A DNA stretch of 64,000 bases, from positions 372,001-436,000 of the IMG/VR virus record IMGVR_UViG_3300029922_000001. One strand, 5' to 3'. The notes beneath the pieces were generated by a model. That model did not search any database, was not told where the DNA came from, and saw only the letters and a program-made list of their open reading frames with translations. Every line of letters begins with the position of its first letter. Position 1 is the stretch's first letter. Made by a program: the position numbers and the translations under genes. Of this stretch, positions 13,970 to 44,232 are shown piece by piece.

Positions 13970-14992
13970 ATGATCAAGTTTTTGGAATATCCGTCAATCG
14001 AACAATTTCGCTCCGTAATTAAAGATTTTAGTCAGGCTGAATTTATTGGTTTAGATGAAGATGGAAATAAAGTTTATGATCGCACTAAACCTAAGCCAAT
14101 TGTTACTTTTAGAGGGACAGTCAAGCTTCACGGAACCAATAGTTGCGTTGCATATCATAATGGTGAAATTGCAATTCAATCTCGTACACAAAATATTACA
14201 CCAGAGAAAGATAATGCTGGATTTGCTTCATTTGTAATGCAACATAAAGAAGCGTTTTTGAATATTTTTGATCAAATTTTAACAAATCATCCTACGGAAA
14301 AAACGATTTATATGTACGCCGAATGGTGCGGTGGCAACATTCAAAAGGGTGTAGCCATTGCTAACCTTCCTAAATCTTTCTTTATCTTTGATATTTGTAT
14401 TTCTGATACAAATGAAGAAGAGATTACTCGTGAGTGGATTGATATTACTCCATATAGAGATATTGATAATGGTATTTATAATATTTTCGATTATCCTAAT
14501 TGGACTATGGATATTGATTTTAATAACCCAGCTTTAAAACAAAATGATCTAATTGATATTACAATTGGAATCGAAGATGAATGCCCAGTTGGTAAAGCTT
14601 TTGGCTTCTCAGGTACGGGTGAAGGTGCTGTATGGTCAGCAATTCATAATGGAAAGCGTTATATCTTTAAGGTTAAAGGTGAAAAGCACTCAGTAAGTAA
14701 AGTAAAAACCTTAGCTAGTGTAGACGTTGAAAAGCTTAACGGAATTAATGAATTCATTGATTATGCTGTTACCGAAAATCGACTAGATCAAGCTATTGAT
14801 ACTGTCTGTAAAAATAGTCTAGATATTCAAAAAATGGGTGATATCATTCGTTGGGTAATGGCAGATGTAATTAAAGAAGAAACCGACACATTAGAATCTA
14901 ATGGACTTACTACTAAAGATGTTACTAGTAAAATCGCAGAAAAAGTTCGTAAAATGGTTAGTCTTCGATTGGATAAACAAAGCGGTTTATAA
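13970..14992 (+). CDS. RNA ligase, Rnl2-like family
   Basis: Motif I VKLHGTN, AEWCG, FFIFDI, GEGAVW, FKVKG. Confidence 0.85.
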   Translation: MIKFLEYPSIEQFRSVIKDFSQAEFIGLDEDGNKVYDRTKPKPIVTFRGTVKLHGTNSCVAYHNGEIAIQSRTQNITPEKDNAGFASFVMQHKEAFLNIFDQILTNHPTEKTIYMYAEWCGGNIQKGVAIANLPKSFFIFDICISDTNEEEITREWIDITPYRDIDNGIYNIFDYPNWTMDIDFNNPALKQNDLIDITIGIEDECPVGKAFGFSGTGEGAVWSAIHNGKRYIFKVKGEKHSVSKVKTLASVDVEKLNGINEFIDYAVTENRLDQAIDTVCKNSLDIQKMGDIIRWVMADVIKEETDTLESNGLTTKDVTSKIAEKVRKMVSLRLDKQSGL

Positions 14993-16203: not shown

Positions 16204-16232
16204 TTGACAAAAGACTTCAAGATAGGTATAAT
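16204..16232 (+). promoter_or_regulatory. consensus sigma70-type promoter
   Basis: TTGACA-17-TATAAT; no ORF downstream. Confidence 0.85.
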
Positions 16233-16256: not shown

Positions 16257-16520
16257 GCCCGATAGCTTGGGTTAACGCAGACTTAACAAGTAGATGTCTA
16301 TATTGATTCACTCATTGCGCAATGAGAAGAATAACGGGACACGCTGAATGGAAAATAGATAACTGAGATTAACACAGTTATTTATAAAGAAGACAGTAGC
16401 ATAAAGAGAAAGCAAGTGAGGCTTAGAGTACGTAATGTTAATCACCCTCTAAGATAATGAGTAAGTAACGTAGTGGTGTTTGGTGAGTTTGATGTGTAGG
16501 TTCGATGCCTACATCGGGCT
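16257..16520 (+). ncRNA. tRNA-shaped RNA with ~190-nt insert in the anticodon arm
   Basis: Acceptor GCCCGAT/ATCGGGC; T-arm GTAGG-TTCGATG-CCTAC; stem AGACTTA/TGAGTTT followed by 5-nt GATGT. Confidence 0.7.
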
Positions 16521-16524
16521 CGCG

Positions 16525-17220
16525 TTAAATATGTCTATTGTAAATATTTTTAATTAAATTGTTTACAATAGACCAATATTCATCTTTATGAGATTGAGTT
16601 AAGTGTTTGCATTTAGATGAATCTATAGTACAAAATTCTATTCCATTTTCATTACATAAAATAGATTTTTGTTTGTCATTATTTTGAATTTTATTCAATT
16701 TATCTTGCCCGTAAATTGGTTCATAATGGAAAATACCATTAAGTTCAATAGCTAATTTCAGTGTTGGAAAATAAAAGTCTAATTCTGAATCAATCGCCTT
16801 ATGTTTATTGTATTCACAATTCAACTCTGGGTAATGTAATTGTATTTGTTCTTCAAGATAAACCTCTAATTTAGATCGTCTATTGCCATGTGTTTTGTTT
16901 TTATTGTTGTAGGTGGTGGCGCAACTATGATTACAGAAAAATCTTCCAGTATTTGATTTTTTTATTGCTCCTAATCTTACTGTTATTTTTTTACTACAAC
17001 ATGAACATTCTTTAGGAACTCTATATTTTATACTTTTTTGTGATGTCATGCACCTTGTAGAACAATAAAGTGGTTGATTTCTTTTAAGAGTTTTATTTAT
17101 TTGAGATTTCTTTCTTATAAAATATAAATTACAAGCATAACAAATTAATTCAATTTGAGGATCACCTTTAAATTGATTTAAATATTCTATTGATATATTA
17201 TTAGATAATGGAGTGTTCAT
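16525..17220 (-). CDS. Vsr/DUF559-like endonuclease with Cys-rich Zn-binding N-terminus (free-standing homing-type)
   Basis: ELDFYFPTLKLAIELNGIFHY; multiple CxxC/CxxxC motifs; the only large minus-strand gene. Confidence 0.75.
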   Translation of the reverse strand: MNTPLSNNISIEYLNQFKGDPQIELICYACNLYFIRKKSQINKTLKRNQPLYCSTRCMTSQKSIKYRVPKECSCCSKKITVRLGAIKKSNTGRFFCNHSCATTYNNKNKTHGNRRSKLEVYLEEQIQLHYPELNCEYNKHKAIDSELDFYFPTLKLAIELNGIFHYEPIYGQDKLNKIQNNDKQKSILCNENGIEFCTIDSSKCKHLTQSHKDEYWSIVNNLIKNIYNRHI

Positions 17221-17263: not shown

Positions 17264-17292
17264 TTGACAGAGTATGAAAAACGAGGTATAAT
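17264..17292 (+). promoter_or_regulatory. consensus sigma70-type promoter
   Basis: TTGACA-17-TATAAT, driving the non-coding block up to 17913. Confidence 0.85.
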
Positions 17293-17483
17293 ACATCCAT
17301 AAGCCAACGAGATAAATATGGTCAAGTTCCGAAATGGGAACCGGAAAGGCTAATTGCATTACCTTCATCGGGTACGAGACGGATATATATACTACGTTGA
17401 TGGTAGGATGAAATTTATTTCATGAATTAGGCTGAACTCCTAATGTATATAATAGGAAAGCTGAAATAATCTTTCCTGCGCAC

Positions 17484-17582
17484 GAGAAAGAAAGCTATAA
17501 GTGGTACATAGAAAGCGCAGAAGTTTCTCTTTAAATTCAATAGAAAAAGAAGAGTGTATAGGTTCGATTCCTATCTTTCTCA
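17484..17582 (+). ncRNA. degenerate tRNA-like element
   Basis: Acceptor GAGAAAG/CTTTCTC; D-arm CTAT-AAGTGGTAC-ATAG; T-arm ATAGG-TTCGATT-CCTAT; no 7-nt anticodon loop. Confidence 0.6.
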
Positions 17583-17591
17583 CGAGAAAAT

Positions 17592-17680
17592 GGGCGTTTG
17601 CCGAAGTTGGTTAACGGCAGTTCCACTATGACATAAAGTTGTAGTGGAGCTGATCAGGGGTTCGAGTCCTCTAGCGCCCA
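17592..17680 (+). ncRNA. tRNA-like RNA with 13-bp extended anticodon stem and 5-nt loop
   Basis: GGGCGTT/AGCGCCC; D-loop AAGTTGGTTAA; GTTCCACTATGAC-ATAAA-GTTGTAGTGGAGC; T-arm AGGGG-TTCGAGT-CCTCT. Confidence 0.75.
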
Positions 17681-17750
17681 CTCCGAGTTGTAACGATGTC
17701 GTAAACCTGTTTAAATGGTAACATACTGGAACGATTTAACGGACAATTCC

Positions 17751-17913
17751 GAGAGGGAAGAATATATAAGCAGTTAGTTAATGGTTATAATAGCATAAAG
17801 TAAGCATGAAGCAATTCATGGGTGAAAGCAGTAGTGAGTTAGAGTCTCAATTATATATTTGTTTAGTAAAGTAGAATTTTAATACAGATTAGTTCGAACC
17901 TACCCTCTCTCCA
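17751..17913 (+). ncRNA. tRNA-like RNA with encoded CCA and expanded D region
   Basis: GAGAGGG/CCCTCTC-T-CCA; TTCGAAC loop; internal stem GAATATATAA/TTATATATTT. Confidence 0.55.
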
Positions 17914-17955: not shown

Positions 17956-18597
17956 ATGAACCACTACGCTTTTGAATATAATTGTGATTATTACTATGAA
18001 TGTCAACATGGCTCAAGTTGTTGTCAAGATGATTATTGTAGATGCGGTAAGATTGTAGATTTAGTCATTACAAAAGTTCCTAATGAAGAAATAATTAAAG
18101 AACTTAAATCAACATTAAAACCCGGTAAAAGACCTAAGCCTATTTGGTCAGATATAGAGAATTATTGTATCGAAAGATTGTTTGTTATTCATAAACTATA
18201 CAAACCAGAAAAGTACGATATCGCCATAGAAGGTGGTTATTATGGTCAAGAATTAGGTGATGCCTATTTTGCATATAACGATGATGTCAAATTTTATGAT
18301 GATGCAAGAGAAATGTTAGCTCTTAATGATAATGATAAAATTAGATTTATCTTAAATAAGGAATATGGTTATATCTCTGATGATTTAAAAAATACTGAAT
18401 TTTTTATTGAATATATTCAATATAGTGATATCTTAACACCAATTGATCTTCGAAGATGTAATGGTGAATCTTATAGTTATAGCGATATTATTGGAATATA
18501 TAAATTAATTGGTGATAAATATAGAATTATAGACGGTCATCATAGATGGCTTGCCGCTAAAGACGAAACCATAGTTAAGGTAATCTGTTATTTTTGA
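17956..18597 (+). CDS. Cys-rich protein with C-terminal ParB/Srx-like domain
   Basis: YRIIDGHHRWLAA; leaderless behind class-B variant. Confidence 0.7.
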   Translation: MNHYAFEYNCDYYYECQHGSSCCQDDYCRCGKIVDLVITKVPNEEIIKELKSTLKPGKRPKPIWSDIENYCIERLFVIHKLYKPEKYDIAIEGGYYGQELGDAYFAYNDDVKFYDDAREMLALNDNDKIRFILNKEYGYISDDLKNTEFFIEYIQYSDILTPIDLRRCNGESYSYSDIIGIYKLIGDKYRIIDGHHRWLAAKDETIVKVICYF

Positions 18598-30769: not shown

Positions 30770-31822
30770 ATGTTTAATGTAGAAAATCTTGAGAAAATGG
30801 TTACTGAGGGATATATTCACAAGATTCCTCATGAAAATGGATTATATCATCTATTAAATTATACGCCTTTGGCTGCGTTCAAAAAGGTGTGGAATTTTGA
30901 AACTCTTAATAGTCGTGGTACGGTTATTGATAATGAATACAATATCATTTCAAAACCTATGGAAAAATTTTTTAATGATTTCGAAGTCACTGAAGGTTTA
31001 ATTCCTTATCATCTTCCATTTGATGCATTTACAAAATTGGACGGTTCTTGTATCATTGTGAGACGATTAGGTGATGAACTTCTTGTGAACACTCGTGGCT
31101 CATTTAAATCACCGCAATCACAAATGGCTCATTTATTGTTAAAAGAAAAGTATAACATTAATGATTTTGATCCAAATTACACTTATATTTTCGAATATAT
31201 CGGGTTAGAAAATCGTATTGTGGTGTTATATAAAGAAAGCGATGTTGTTCTTTTAACAATGTATGATATGCGAACATTAGAAGAAGTTGAATATGATCAA
31301 TTCCCTAAACATTTCAATATTGTTAAGCGATATGATGGTCTTGATATTGAAACAATGAAATCATTAGACATTCCAAATGAAGAAGGTTTTGTTGTTAGAT
31401 TTTCTAACGGTTTCCGTATGAAACTGAAGATGAAAACTTATATGTCACTTCATGGAATTGTTACAGGATTGAGTTCTAGAAAAGTTTGGGAATTAATGAA
31501 AGATGGAAAATCTCTAGAAGAAATTGCATCTGCTTTACCAGATGAATTTTATGAATTCGCAACTAAAACAAAAACACAACTTCAGGATAAGTTTGATGCA
31601 ATTGAAAGCAAGGTGCAGATTGCTCAGATGGGACTTGCGTTCGCAGGTTTAACTGAGCGAAAGGATAAAGCATTGTGGATTCAGGCTAATGCTAAGGATG
31701 TTGCACCATACATGTATGCATGGCTTGATGGTAAGGATTTCACCGCTGGTATTTGGAAGTCAATCTATCCTCCATATATCAGCCCTTTTGAAGAAAGAGC
31801 TAAGTTAACAGGAGAGAACTAA
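30770..31822 (+). CDS. rnlA: RNA ligase 1 (T4 RnlA-like)
   Basis: SRGTV...KFFN, motif I KLDGS, FEYIG.ENRIVV.Y, EEGFVVRF...RMKLK. Confidence 0.85.
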   Translation: MFNVENLEKMVTEGYIHKIPHENGLYHLLNYTPLAAFKKVWNFETLNSRGTVIDNEYNIISKPMEKFFNDFEVTEGLIPYHLPFDAFTKLDGSCIIVRRLGDELLVNTRGSFKSPQSQMAHLLLKEKYNINDFDPNYTYIFEYIGLENRIVVLYKESDVVLLTMYDMRTLEEVEYDQFPKHFNIVKRYDGLDIETMKSLDIPNEEGFVVRFSNGFRMKLKMKTYMSLHGIVTGLSSRKVWELMKDGKSLEEIASALPDEFYEFATKTKTQLQDKFDAIESKVQIAQMGLAFAGLTERKDKALWIQANAKDVAPYMYAWLDGKDFTAGIWKSIYPPYISPFEERAKLTGEN

Positions 31823-43527: not shown

Positions 43528-44232
43528 ATGAATGTCGTACACTGTTCCCTTGTTGGTAGTCGAATGCATGGATTAAATACCGAAAATTCTGATTATGATT
43601 ATCGAACGATTTATAAAATGGATCTGAAAGATATTCTTGATCCTTTTATTAAACCTGAAGAAAAAAAGGTATTAGAAGATGGACAAGATGTTGAAGAATT
43701 TGAATTAAGGCATTTTTTGAAGATGTTATGTGGAGGCAACGGTACCGCATACGAAATCCTTTGGAGTGATCAATACACAACGTCACCAGACTTTCAAGTA
43801 TTCAAAGACAATAAGCACTGGTTCTTGAATACAAAGGGTATCTGTAATGCTCATATTGGTTATGCCGATTCTCAGCTAGAAAACTTTTTAGAGAAAGTCG
43901 AAAAAGATCCTACCGCATTAGATAAGTCTAATGCAAGGAATCGAATTCGAAAAGCTTCTGTAGCTGGTATCCGTATTCTATGTCAAGCAGAACAGTTGCT
44001 ATTGACAGGTGATTTTGCACCAAAGATTGCTGACTATAATAAGAATGTAGCAGATTATCTATTGGAACAGAAGTACACTCCTGATGATCAGATTAATGCA
44101 GATTTTATCACTAGGAATATTGAGATAATCGAAGGACTGAAATTTGATGTAAAGAAACTCCATGAGAATGTTCCTGTAGTTCTGCCTCAATATGATCAGA
44201 TTGTTGAAGCTTTGGTCGCAATTTATTCATAA
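43528..44232 (+). CDS. Pol-beta-superfamily nucleotidyltransferase (RlaP-like)
   Basis: VGSRMHGLNTENSDYDYR; ELRHFLKML..GN..AYEILWS. Confidence 0.8.
   Translation: MNVVHCSLVGSRMHGLNTENSDYDYRTIYKMDLKDILDPFIKPEEKKVLEDGQDVEEFELRHFLKMLCGGNGTAYEILWSDQYTTSPDFQVFKDNKHWFLNTKGICNAHIGYADSQLENFLEKVEKDPTALDKSNARNRIRKASVAGIRILCQAEQLLLTGDFAPKIADYNKNVADYLLEQKYTPDDQINADFITRNIEIIEGLKFDVKKLHENVPVVLPQYDQIVEALVAIYS

What the first reader, a model, noticed from the sequence alone, without database searches (positions are those of the whole stretch)
17592..17680. tRNA whose anticodon arm is a 13-bp rod capped by a 5-nt loop
Seen: acceptor, D-arm with GG, variable loop TGATC and T-arm are all near-canonical. The 7-nt anticodon loop is replaced by 21 nt that pair into GTTCCACTATGAC/GTTGTAGTGGAGC with an ATAAA loop. 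Continuous pairing suggests selection rather than decay. Inference: a non-decoding tRNA mimic that could titrate anticodon nucleases or tRNA-sensing defences (PrrC/RloC-type, PARIS, retron-linked), or a substrate for cut-and-ligate maturation by the phage RNA ligases.
Basis: partly seen in the sequence, partly recalled or inferred. Interest (0 to 1): 0.72.

Follow-up and report, generated by a model that had tools for sequence, protein, structure and literature searches.

The report
Phage valine tRNA with sealed anticodon
A giant peat phage carries a gene derived from a valine tRNA whose anticodon arm has become a closed 13-base-pair rod, so the RNA still looks like a tRNA but almost certainly cannot read codons; six more tRNA genes in the same genome also carry hairpin inserts in the anticodon loop.

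Summary
Window 17592-17680 (+) is a tRNA-shaped gene with a normal acceptor stem, D-loop and T-arm, and an anticodon arm that forms a 13-bp helix (3 G-U pairs) capped by AUAAA (z = -5.2 against shuffles).

New findings:
1. The body comes from tRNA-Val. Its 25-nt T-arm/acceptor matches only two tRNA-Val genes among 185k genomes. The old Val(GAC) arm (CCACU-AUGACAU-AGUGG) is still readable inside the rod.
2. The 14 extra nucleotides are 8 nt that pair back onto the anticodon, plus 3 bp added at the base of the stem. ARAGORN's 'Ser' and 'Tyr plus intron' calls are therefore artefacts.
3. Six other tRNA genes in this 441-kb phage (Gly x2, Cys, Thr, Leu, Lys) carry 17-31-nt hairpin inserts. Five lie at position 36/37 and Cys at 35/36. 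This is the class reported as 'enigmatic introns' in Lak megaphages.
4. The phage encodes Pnkp, Rnl1-like and Rnl2-like ligases, RlaP, Tpt1 and Ro60, but no recognisable splicing endonuclease.

Even with the 8 nt removed, the stem would be 8 bp. My best reading is a non-decoding tRNA mimic (about 0.4). The rivals are a precursor matured by cutting and ligation (0.25) and a decaying relic (0.25). I found no homologue and no RNA data for the gene itself.

The parts
17592..17680 (+). The tRNA-shaped gene (89 nt, discriminator A at 17680, no encoded CCA)
   Evidence: Rfam tRNA 33.5 bits; ARAGORN hit; fold z = -5.2
17620..17650 (+). Closed anticodon arm: 13-bp rod (17620-17632 paired with 17638-17650) capped by AUAAA (17633-17637)
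   Evidence: 0 of 2000 shuffled inserts are as stable
17623..17634 (+). Remnant of the ancestral tRNA-Val(GAC) anticodon stem 5' strand (CCACU) and 7-nt loop (AUGACAU; anticodon GAC at 17630-17632)
   Evidence: 10 of 12 identical to E. coli valV/valW CCACC-UUGACAU; 34 of 200,000 shuffles reach this
17635..17642 (+). 8 extra nucleotides (AAAGUUGU); the last five pair with loop positions 32-36, including the anticodon
   Evidence: by comparison with valV/valW and two bacterial tRNA-Val genes
17643..17647 (+). Ancestral anticodon stem 3' strand (AGUGG), with a compensatory change at pair 31-39
17620..17622 (+). 3 nt (GUU) that pair with AGC at 17648-17650; they lengthen the base of the anticodon stem by 3 bp relative to tRNA-Val
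17656..17680 (+). T-arm, acceptor 3' strand and A73, identical over 25 nt to tRNA-Val(UAC) genes of an Omnitrophota MAG and a Planctomycetales MAG
   Evidence: exact-pattern scan of 185,579 species genomes found 2 hits, both tRNA-Val
17264..17292 (+). Perfect sigma-70 consensus promoter (TTGACA-17-TATAAT, 12 of 12) upstream of the array of tRNA-like units that contains the gene
17681..17690 (+). 3' trailer CUCCGAGUUG: a diverged copy of the C(C)(A)(C)GAGAWWW trailer that follows 22 of 29 tRNA genes of this genome
17484..17583 (+). Neighbouring aberrant tRNA-like unit in the same array (7-bp acceptor, canonical T-arm, odd middle part, consensus trailer ACGAGAAAAU)

Best explanation
The gene descends from a tRNA-Val(GAC). 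Its acceptor stem, D-loop and T-arm are kept. Its anticodon arm has been lengthened at both ends:
- 8 nt inserted 3' of the loop fold back onto loop positions 32-36, burying the anticodon.
- 3 extra base pairs were added at the base of the stem.

The result is a rigid, closed rod of 13-15 bp.

The gene sits behind a perfect consensus promoter, in an array of tRNA-like units that are probably cut out by the tRNA end-processing enzymes.

The product cannot pair with a codon. It cannot show A35 and C36 to valyl-tRNA synthetase. It offers no loop to anticodon nucleases.

I infer that it works as a non-decoding tRNA mimic. It would be a stable RNA that presents only the acceptor/T-arm face of a tRNA to a protein that reads that face. 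Candidates are a host toxin or enzyme that targets tRNA ends, or a phage RNA-repair factor.

Shown: the structure, the Val ancestry, the promoter, and the genome-wide class of insert-bearing tRNA genes.
Inferred: transcription, processing, stability, lack of decoding, and the binding partner.
For: - Structure and its improbability.
- Val ancestry: 25 of 25 nt match only tRNA-Val genes, and the inner arm matches E. coli valV/valW.
- Both ends of the arm were lengthened by paired sequence. An intron needs only the top insert.
- Removing the 8 nt would still leave an 8-bp anticodon stem.
- No single excision that keeps the 5-bp stem GUUCC/GGAGC gives a Val anticodon (worked through).
- All three departures from Watson-Crick pairing in the rod are G-U, with no A-C or transversion mismatch.
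- The body keeps a canonical T-loop, GG in the D-loop and a 7-bp acceptor stem.
- A 12-of-12 promoter lies upstream.
- Neighbouring units in the array are also aberrant tRNA-like RNAs, and longer ones nearby appear with their inserts retained in metatranscriptome contigs.
Against: - No RNA evidence exists for this gene. No RNA run holds its words and no RNA contig covers it.
- No homologue was found in any collection, so there is no covariation.
- No binding partner is identified.
- Six other insert-bearing tRNA genes in the genome look like real tRNAs that need the insert removed. A maturation pathway may therefore exist and could also act here.
- The phage has no other tRNA-Val, which would fit a functional Val tRNA.
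- The 3' trailer departs from the genome's consensus.
Confidence: 0.4

Rival explanations
1. Masked precursor ('pro-tRNA'). The 8-nt insert is a short hairpin intron of the same class as in the six other interrupted tRNA genes. An unidentified endonuclease cuts at both junctions. The phage Pnkp, Rnl1/Rnl2 and Tpt1 then heal and seal the loop, giving the phage's only tRNA-Val(GAC).
For: - Seven insert-bearing tRNA genes share one design: the insert pairs with the anticodon.
- For Gly(GCC), Gly(UCC), Thr(UGU), Leu(UAG) and Lys(UUU), removal at 36/37 restores canonical loops that agree with acceptor identity elements and with the nearest tRNAs of other phages.
- Lak megaphage introns sit at the same site, as shown by an intron-less allele.
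- Healing and sealing enzymes, including Tpt1, are encoded. Tpt1 lies directly upstream of a tRNA array.
- Removing 8 nt here restores AUGACAU, a normal Val loop.
Against: - The anticodon stem would still be 8 bp instead of 5.
- Only one nucleotide separates the acceptor and D stems.
- The phage has no EndA, RtcB, RNase III or 2H enzyme, and the rod has no bulge-helix-bulge.
- No spliced RNA has been observed for any member.
- The gene lies in an array of aberrant units, not among canonical tRNAs.
Confidence: 0.25
2. Decaying relic. A former tRNA-Val gene was disabled by palindrome-extending replication errors (template switching in the inverted repeat of the anticodon arm). It is carried along in a plastic tRNA region next to a homing endonuclease gene and has no function of its own.
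For: - The anticodon arm is a quasi-palindrome, and template switching can lengthen such arms without selection (established knowledge).
- An HNH/homing-endonuclease-like ORF lies 370 nt away, and its homologues sit inside the tRNA arrays of five other phages.
- Neighbouring units look degenerate.
- The trailer motif is diverged.
- The promoter could simply serve the downstream ORFs.
Against: - The body is unusually intact: 25 of 25 nt match bacterial tRNA-Val, and the D-stem changes are compensatory.
- All three rod substitutions preserve pairing at the RNA level only.
- Two separate paired extensions are needed.
- Six further genes show the same design with unrelated insert sequences.
Confidence: 0.25
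3. Literal gene-finder readings: a tRNA-Ser(ACU) with a long variable arm, or a tRNA-Tyr(GUA) with a 14-nt intron between positions 31 and 32.
For: - ARAGORN default and intron modes make these calls.
- Lak megaphages carry intron-bearing tRNA-Tyr(GUA) genes with class I bodies.
Against: - The Ser fold pairs only 3 of 5 positions in its anticodon stem.
- The body is Val-like, not Tyr-like or Ser-like.
- The triplet GUA is simply the wobble complement of sequence next to the retained Val loop.
- The phage already has two class II tRNA-Tyr genes.
Confidence: 0.05
4. Y-RNA-like partner of the phage Ro60 protein. The tRNA-like domain plus a long helix at the anticodon position resembles bacterial YrlA, circularly permuted.
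For: - The phage encodes a 554-aa Ro60 (TROVE plus Ro60 vWA domains).
- No Rfam Y RNA exists anywhere in the genome, so its RNA partner is unknown.
- The gene lies 2.6 kb from an RNA ligase gene, as Y RNAs lie in bacterial rsr-rtcB repair operons (established knowledge).
Against: - The rod has no bulge of the kind Ro60 binds.
- The RNA ends lie at the acceptor stem, not at the helix.
- The Ro60 gene is about 375 kb away in the record.
- No Rfam similarity at E <= 5.
Confidence: 0.05

Closest known systems
'Enigmatic introns' in tRNA genes of Lak megaphages (Devoto et al. 2019, PMC6784885)
   Same: - Huge-phage tRNA genes are interrupted in the anticodon loop by non-group-I sequence.
- The insertion site is one nucleotide off the eukaryotic 37/38 site; read as 36/37 it restores canonical loops, matching five of the seven genes here.
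- The mechanism is unknown.
- Thr, Gly and Tyr are among the isotypes affected.
   Different: - Lak inserts are 79-141 nt, related to one another, and contain a tRNA-like T-arm.
- The inserts here are 8-31 nt, unrelated in sequence, and are plain hairpins that pair with the anticodon.
- The gene in question also has a lengthened stem base.
Archaeal/eukaryal tRNA introns cut by the splicing endonuclease (bulge-helix-bulge)
   Same: - A short intron lies in the anticodon loop and pairs with the anticodon.
- A heal-and-seal ligase pathway with Tpt1 exists in fungi and plants, and the phage encodes Tpt1, an Rnl1-family ligase and Pnkp.
   Different: - There are no 3-nt bulges; the inferred junctions lie inside a continuous helix.
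- No EndA homologue is present in the phage.
- The bacteriophage context implies a bacterial host.
Group I introns in bacterial tRNA anticodon loops
   Same: Interrupted bacterial or phage tRNA genes, some reported immediately 3' of the anticodon (from memory, not checked here).
   Different: - 8-31 nt is far too short for a ribozyme.
- There is no Rfam group I hit anywhere in the genome.
- There is no conserved U at the 5' splice site and no terminal G.
Bacterial Y RNA YrlA (tRNA mimic bound by Ro60/Rsr)
   Same: - A non-decoding RNA with a tRNA-like acceptor/D/T module and a long helix where the anticodon arm would be.
- It is encoded with RNA-repair genes.
- The phage has a Ro60.
   Different: - The topology is permuted.
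- There is no Ro-binding bulged helix.
- There is no Rfam match.
Engineered 'tRNA scaffolds' for recombinant RNA (anticodon arm replaced by a foreign helix; recalled from the literature, not checked here)
   Same: - A tRNA body keeps processing and stability while the anticodon arm carries an arbitrary closed helix.
- The 263-nt unit at window 16259-16521 looks like a natural version with a 195-nt cargo.
   Different: These scaffolds are man-made. Here the helix is built from the tRNA's own anticodon loop plus its antisense.
tRNA-Sec and tRNA-Pyl (natural tRNAs with lengthened anticodon stems)
   Same: - A longer anticodon stem.
- As in tRNA-Pyl, a single nucleotide between the acceptor and D stems and a possible 3-nt variable loop.
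   Different: - Those stems are 6 bp with an open 7-nt loop and they decode.
- Here the stem is 8 bp before the masked loop, and the loop is closed.

Membership tests
tRNA (Rfam RF00005) | Cloverleaf with acceptor stem, D-arm, T-arm and conserved T-loop/D-loop residues, scoring above the gathering threshold | tested here: met
   33.5 bits against a gathering score of 29, full model 1-71; 33 nt are treated as an insertion at the anticodon arm
tRNA (functional decoder) | 5-bp anticodon stem closed by an open 7-nt loop with U33 and a free anticodon | tested here: not met
   13 continuous pairs and a 5-nt loop. The retained Val loop is paired with the insert and sits on an 8-bp stem.
tRNA-Val lineage | Sequence similarity of the body and the anticodon arm to tRNA-Val genes; discriminator A73 | tested here: met
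   25 of 25 nt T-arm/acceptor identity with only two genomes, both tRNA-Val. The inner arm matches E. coli valV/valW at 10 of 12 positions, reached by 34 of 200,000 shuffles. A73 is present.
Insert-bearing tRNA genes of megaphages (Lak-type 'introns') | Non-group-I insert in the anticodon loop of a phage tRNA gene, 3' of the anticodon | tested here: met
   An 8-nt insert lies 3' of the retained Val loop or anticodon (36/37, 37/38 or 38/39; these cannot be told apart). Six paralogous cases occur in the genome.
Insert-bearing tRNA genes of megaphages (Lak-type 'introns') | Removal of the insert restores a normal tRNA | tested here: not met
   Met for Gly x2, Thr, Leu, Lys and Cys. Not met for this gene, whose stem stays 3 bp too long.
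Insert-bearing tRNA genes of megaphages (Lak-type 'introns') | The insert is actually excised from the RNA | not testable with these tools
   No RNA run holds the gene. Contig-level metatranscriptomes do not cover it.
Archaeal/eukaryal spliced tRNA (BHB intron) | Bulge-helix-bulge (two 3-nt bulges around a 4-bp helix) at the splice sites | tested here: not met
   The rod has no unpaired nucleotide.
Archaeal/eukaryal spliced tRNA (BHB intron) | Splicing endonuclease (EndA/Sen) available | tested here: not met
   PF01974 is absent from the phage record; the controls hit four archaea. The host is unknown.
Group I intron in tRNA | Ribozyme core (P3-P9) of at least about 200 nt, with an Rfam Intron_gpI match | tested here: not met
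   The insert is 8-14 nt. There is no match at E <= 5 locally or at the gathering score genome-wide.
Y RNA / YrlA | Ro60-binding helix with a conserved bulge, formed by the 5' and 3' ends; Rfam match | tested here: not met
   No bulge is present and the ends lie at the acceptor stem. There is no Rfam hit. A phage Ro60 is present.
tmRNA | tRNA-Ala-like ends with G3-U70 and a tag reading frame | tested here: not met
   ARAGORN finds no tmRNA. Pair 3-70 is G-C.

The most novel reading that the evidence does not exclude
This megaphage runs a tRNA maturation pathway so far undescribed in bacteria. Hairpin inserts that mask the anticodon would be cut out of at least six pre-tRNAs by an unknown endonuclease that measures from the tRNA body. 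The loop would then be resealed by the phage's own Pnkp, Rnl1/Rnl2 and Tpt1. Phage tRNAs would therefore stay invisible to host anticodon nucleases until they are matured. The Val-derived gene studied here would be an offshoot of that system, converted into a permanently sealed tRNA mimic that disarms a host factor targeting tRNA ends.
Probability: 0.2. Interest if true: 0.85.

Novelty: new variant of a known kind. Interest (0 to 1): 0.6.

Why it matters
Phage tRNAs are now recognised as counter-measures against defences that cut or modify host tRNAs. Interrupted tRNA genes in huge phages have been called enigmatic since 2019, and no mechanism has been found.

This genome offers a compact test set:
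- Seven short inserts (8-31 nt), each of which pairs with the anticodon.
- Both of the phage's only Gly tRNAs and its only Leu(UAG) tRNA are among them.
- A complete healing and sealing kit is present, including Tpt1, the signature enzyme of fungal and plant tRNA splicing.
- No known splicing endonuclease is present.

The genome therefore makes two questions directly testable with seven small transcripts and a few enzymes. Are such inserts removed in bacteria? If so, what removes them?

The gene studied here is the extreme case. If it is stable, it would be a natural 'tRNA scaffold': a tRNA body with a sealed anticodon arm. It would also be a candidate decoy for proteins that read tRNA ends.

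Tried and rejected
**Searches for homologues, none usable**
- blastn against 50,697 phage records, with the 761-nt region and with the gene alone: no match.
- Exact-pattern scan of IMG/VR for the T-arm/acceptor: no match.
- Gapped-pattern scan of JGI metagenomes, allowing any insert of 7-37 nt: only the source contig.
- Synteny through both flanking proteins: homologues exist but carry no tRNA gene at the matching place.
- Two other assemblies of the same phage are identical.
- blastn against E. coli genomes: no match.

**RNA evidence**
- No RNA run holds the gene.
- The one read-laying run showed no RNA contig and no joint over it.

**RNase III idea**
- I considered that RNase III makes the cuts. 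In five genes the two inferred junctions face each other in the helix with a 2-nt 3' overhang.
- I set it aside as unsupported. The stagger follows largely from where I placed the junctions. It does not hold for this gene, nor for a Leu gene of another huge phage in the Lak supplement. The phage has no RNase III. Tpt1 points to cyclic-phosphate chemistry instead.

**Mobile element idea**
- Each insert is unique in the genome.

**Alternative genetic code**
- Two tRNA(CUA) genes exist, but reading TAG as sense barely lengthens the ORFs. I used the standard code throughout.

**Isotype by similarity to phage tRNAs**
- This was inconclusive for the gene until the bacterial genome scan.

**A 501-kb phage sharing the ligase**
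- It has extra hairpins in the variable region of its tRNAs, not in the anticodon arm.

**Ro60 link**
- No Y RNA was found genome-wide, and nothing ties this gene to Ro60.

**Binding prediction**
- I ran no complex prediction, because jobs with RNA give no verdict.

Full report
**Setting.** The window is bases 372,001-436,000 of a 441,498-bp virus record from a peat metagenome (34% G+C; CheckV completeness 100%). The standard genetic code fits. ORFs of at least 100 aa cover 95% of the genome, and reading TAG as sense adds almost nothing, although two tRNA(CUA) genes are present.

**Check of the observation.**
- It has a 7-bp acceptor stem, a D-arm with GG, a 5-nt variable loop and a canonical T-arm.
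- The anticodon arm forms 13 uninterrupted pairs (10 Watson-Crick, 3 G-U) and ends in AUAAA.
- RNAfold gives -41.3 kcal/mol against -24.2 +/- 3.3 for shuffles (z = -5.2; 0 of 200 shuffles fold as well).
- Shuffling only the extra nucleotides never reproduces the arm's stability (0 of 2000).
- Rfam's tRNA model scores 33.5 bits, just above its threshold of 29.
- Independent peat DNA samples and a Logan assembly carry the identical sequence.

**What the gene finders say, and why it is wrong.** ARAGORN calls a tRNA-Ser(ACU) with a long variable arm. In intron mode it calls a tRNA-Tyr(GUA) with a 14-nt intron before position 32. Neither reading fits the body of the molecule.

**Ancestry.**
- I scanned one genome from each of 185,579 prokaryotic species for the 25 nt that make up the T-arm, the acceptor 3' strand and the discriminator. 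The scan gave exactly two hits.
- Both hits are tRNA-Val(UAC) genes, one in an Omnitrophota MAG and one in a Planctomycetales MAG. Both also share the D-loop AGUUGGUUA.
- I then compared the gene with the annotated E. coli tRNA-Val(GAC) genes valV and valW.
- The old anticodon arm is still readable inside the rod. CCACU-AUGACAU ... AGUGG in this gene corresponds to CCACC-UUGACAU-GGUGG in E. coli.
- That is 10 of 12 identical on the 5' strand plus loop. Only 34 of 200,000 shuffles of the arm reach this level. The closing pair has changed from C-G to U-A in a compensatory way.
- The 14 extra nucleotides are therefore not one block. Eight of them (17635-17642) follow the old loop, and the last five of those pair with loop positions 32-36, including the anticodon GAC.
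- The other six (17620-17622 and 17648-17650) add three base pairs at the base of the stem.
- The triplet GUA that ARAGORN reads as an anticodon is only the wobble complement of the sequence beside the old loop.

**A class of such genes in the genome.** Whole-genome scans and a search of my own found six more tRNA genes with a hairpin insert in the anticodon loop. Genome coordinates:

| Isotype | Coordinates | Insert |
|---|---|---|
| Gly(GCC) | c245888-245993 | 31 nt |
| Gly(UCC) | c247521-247620 | 22 nt |
| Cys(GCA) | c251433-251524 | 17 nt |
| Thr(UGU) | c253296-253394 | 18 nt |
| Leu(UAG) | c275381-275484 | 18 nt |
| Lys(UUU) | 172713-172810 | 24 nt |

- In every case the insert lengthens the anticodon helix and pairs with the anticodon. 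The arms are far more stable than with shuffled inserts (z from -2.7 to -4.8).
- The insert sequences are unrelated to each other and unique in the genome.
- Placing the insert between positions 36 and 37 (35/36 for Cys) restores canonical loops.
- The restored anticodons agree with the acceptor identity elements: U73 with G1-C72, C2-G71 and G3-C70 for both Gly genes; U73 for Cys; and a class II body with A73 for Leu.
- They also agree with the nearest tRNAs of other phages for Gly, Leu and Lys.
- The Lys gene aligns with the phage's own intact tRNA-Lys(UUU), with the gap exactly after position 36.
- The two Gly genes and the Leu(UAG) gene are the only genes for those anticodons in the phage.

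**Precedent.** Devoto et al. reported 'enigmatic introns' in tRNA genes of Lak megaphages and noted that other huge phages have them too.
- Their supplementary table shows inserts of 79-141 nt in Tyr, Thr, Phe and Gly genes.
- They state that an intron-less allele places the insert one nucleotide away from the predicted 37/38 site. Read as 36/37, this restores CU-NNN-AA loops, the same site as here.
- I found no later paper that explains the mechanism.

**Enzymes.**
- The window encodes an Rnl2-family ligase (13970-14992), an Rnl1-family ligase (30770-31822), the repair nucleotidyltransferase RlaP (43528-44232), two NUDIX proteins and a metallophosphoesterase.
- Elsewhere the phage encodes a T4-type Pnkp with kinase and HAD phosphatase domains (genome 287883-288761).
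- It encodes a Tpt1/KptA RNA 2'-phosphotransferase that contains the conserved RH, RANQGHS and RHAVHLS motifs (E = 2.5e-44 to PDB 7kw8). This gene lies directly upstream of the Thr/Ser tRNA array.
- It also encodes a NADAR protein and a Ro60.
- The record has no EndA, RtcB, RNase III or 2H phosphoesterase.
- Rfam finds only tRNAs in the whole genome: no group I intron, ribozyme, Y RNA or tmRNA.
- So healing and sealing are covered, and the cutting enzyme, if there is one, is unknown.

**Local context.**
- A perfect sigma-70 consensus promoter (12 of 12) lies at 17264-17292, ahead of an array of units separated by CGAG motifs.
- Twenty-two of the 29 tRNA genes in the genome are followed within a few bases by GAGAWWW. 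The motif is not enriched in the genome as a whole.
- The unit just upstream (17484-17583) has this trailer. The gene studied here has a diverged form.
- Its neighbours in the array are also aberrant tRNA-like units.
- A second perfect promoter at 16204-16232 precedes a 263-nt RNA with a perfect acceptor stem, a canonical T-arm and about 195 nt in between.
- Metatranscriptome contigs from two studies cover that RNA end to end with the insert retained. Another contig covers 17756-17900.
- Units shorter than about 100 nt, including the gene studied here, are not seen. That pattern is what size-selected libraries would give if the array is cut into units, but it is weak evidence.
- An HNH/homing-endonuclease-like ORF (16525-17220, minus strand) lies between the two RNA loci. 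Its homologues sit inside the tRNA arrays of five other phages.

**Interpretation.** Three readings remain.
1. **Non-decoding tRNA mimic (about 0.4).** The arm was lengthened by paired sequence at both ends. Removing the top insert would leave an 8-bp stem, which no decoding tRNA has. The body is kept in near-perfect tRNA form. All three non-Watson-Crick positions in the rod are G-U. Such an RNA could only act through its acceptor/T-arm face. The partner is unknown.
2. **Masked precursor matured by cutting and ligation (about 0.25).** This fits the six other genes and the enzyme kit, and the phage has no other tRNA-Val. It does not fit the long stem.
3. **Relic (about 0.25).** The arm could have been produced by palindrome-extending replication errors in a plastic tRNA region.

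The literal ARAGORN readings and a Ro60 partnership each get about 0.05.

**What is shown and what is not.**
- Shown: the structure and its statistical support, the Val ancestry, the decomposition of the insert, the six sister genes, the enzyme inventory, the promoters, and the trailer motif.
- Not shown: transcription of this gene, its ends, its stability, any excision, any charging, and any partner.

Noticed in passing
outside the window: genome c245888-245993, c247521-247620, c251433-251524, c253296-253394, c275381-275484, 172713-172810 (loci L114, L115, L116): Six further tRNA genes (Gly GCC, Gly UCC, Cys GCA, Thr UGU, Leu UAG, Lys UUU) carry 17-31-nt hairpin inserts that pair with the anticodon. 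Five lie at 36/37 and Cys at 35/36. Three of them (Gly GCC, Thr, Lys) share a G-G mismatch two positions into the insert.
   Followed up: yes
window 16259-16521 (+), promoter 16204-16232: A 263-nt RNA has a perfect 7-bp acceptor stem, a canonical T-arm and about 195 nt in between, behind a 12-of-12 sigma-70 promoter. Metatranscriptome contigs from two studies cover it end to end with the insert retained. It has no Rfam family.
   Followed up: partly
window 17756-17900 (+): This intergenic stretch downstream of the gene is covered by a metatranscriptome contig with no differences. It begins just after a CGAGAGG motif. Its tRNA-likeness is weak (3-bp T-stem).
   Followed up: partly
window 17384-17452 and 17484-17583 (+): Two more aberrant tRNA-like units lie in the same array. 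One is A+T-rich with a 6-nt anticodon loop. The other has a perfect acceptor stem, a canonical T-arm and an irregular middle (weak tRNA-Sec-like match, 19 bits).
   Followed up: partly
whole genome; in the window e.g. 17308, 17375, 17483, 17583, 17750: A conserved 3' trailer C(C)(A)(C)GAGAWWW follows 22 of 29 tRNA genes, although the motif is not enriched genome-wide. It is probably a processing signal.
   Followed up: partly
window 16525-17220 (-): This 231-aa ORF matches PHROG HNH/homing endonuclease families. Homologues at 42-49% identity sit inside the tRNA arrays of five other IMG/VR phages, on the strand opposite the tRNAs.
   Followed up: partly
window 13970-14992, 30770-31822, 43528-44232; genome 253903-254463 (-), 287883-288761, 14878-16542: The phage carries a full RNA repair kit: Rnl2-like and Rnl1-like ligases, RlaP, Tpt1/KptA (next to a tRNA array), T4-type Pnkp, a NADAR protein, and a Ro60 with no recognisable Y RNA anywhere in the genome.
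   Followed up: partly
outside the window: genome 172128-172200 and 353602-353673: Two tRNA(CUA) amber-suppressor-type genes are present, yet ORF statistics give no sign that TAG is read as sense across the genome.
   Followed up: partly
loci L089-L108 (a 501-kb, 25% G+C IMG/VR phage that shares the Rnl2-like ligase): Many tRNAs of normally short isotypes (Lys, Met, Glu, Asp, Cys, Trp) carry an extra hairpin in the variable region and are 82-91 nt long. This is a different kind of tRNA enlargement from the anticodon-arm inserts.
   Followed up: no
loci L140, L141: The only exact matches to the gene's T-arm/acceptor lie in Omnitrophota and Planctomycetales MAGs. This is a weak hint at the source of the tRNA, or at the host lineage.
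   Followed up: no
protein P0001 (window 17956-18597): The protein index lists a longest contig of 521,591 bp for this exact protein, longer than the 441,498-bp record. A more complete assembly of the phage may exist, but it was not returned.
   Followed up: no
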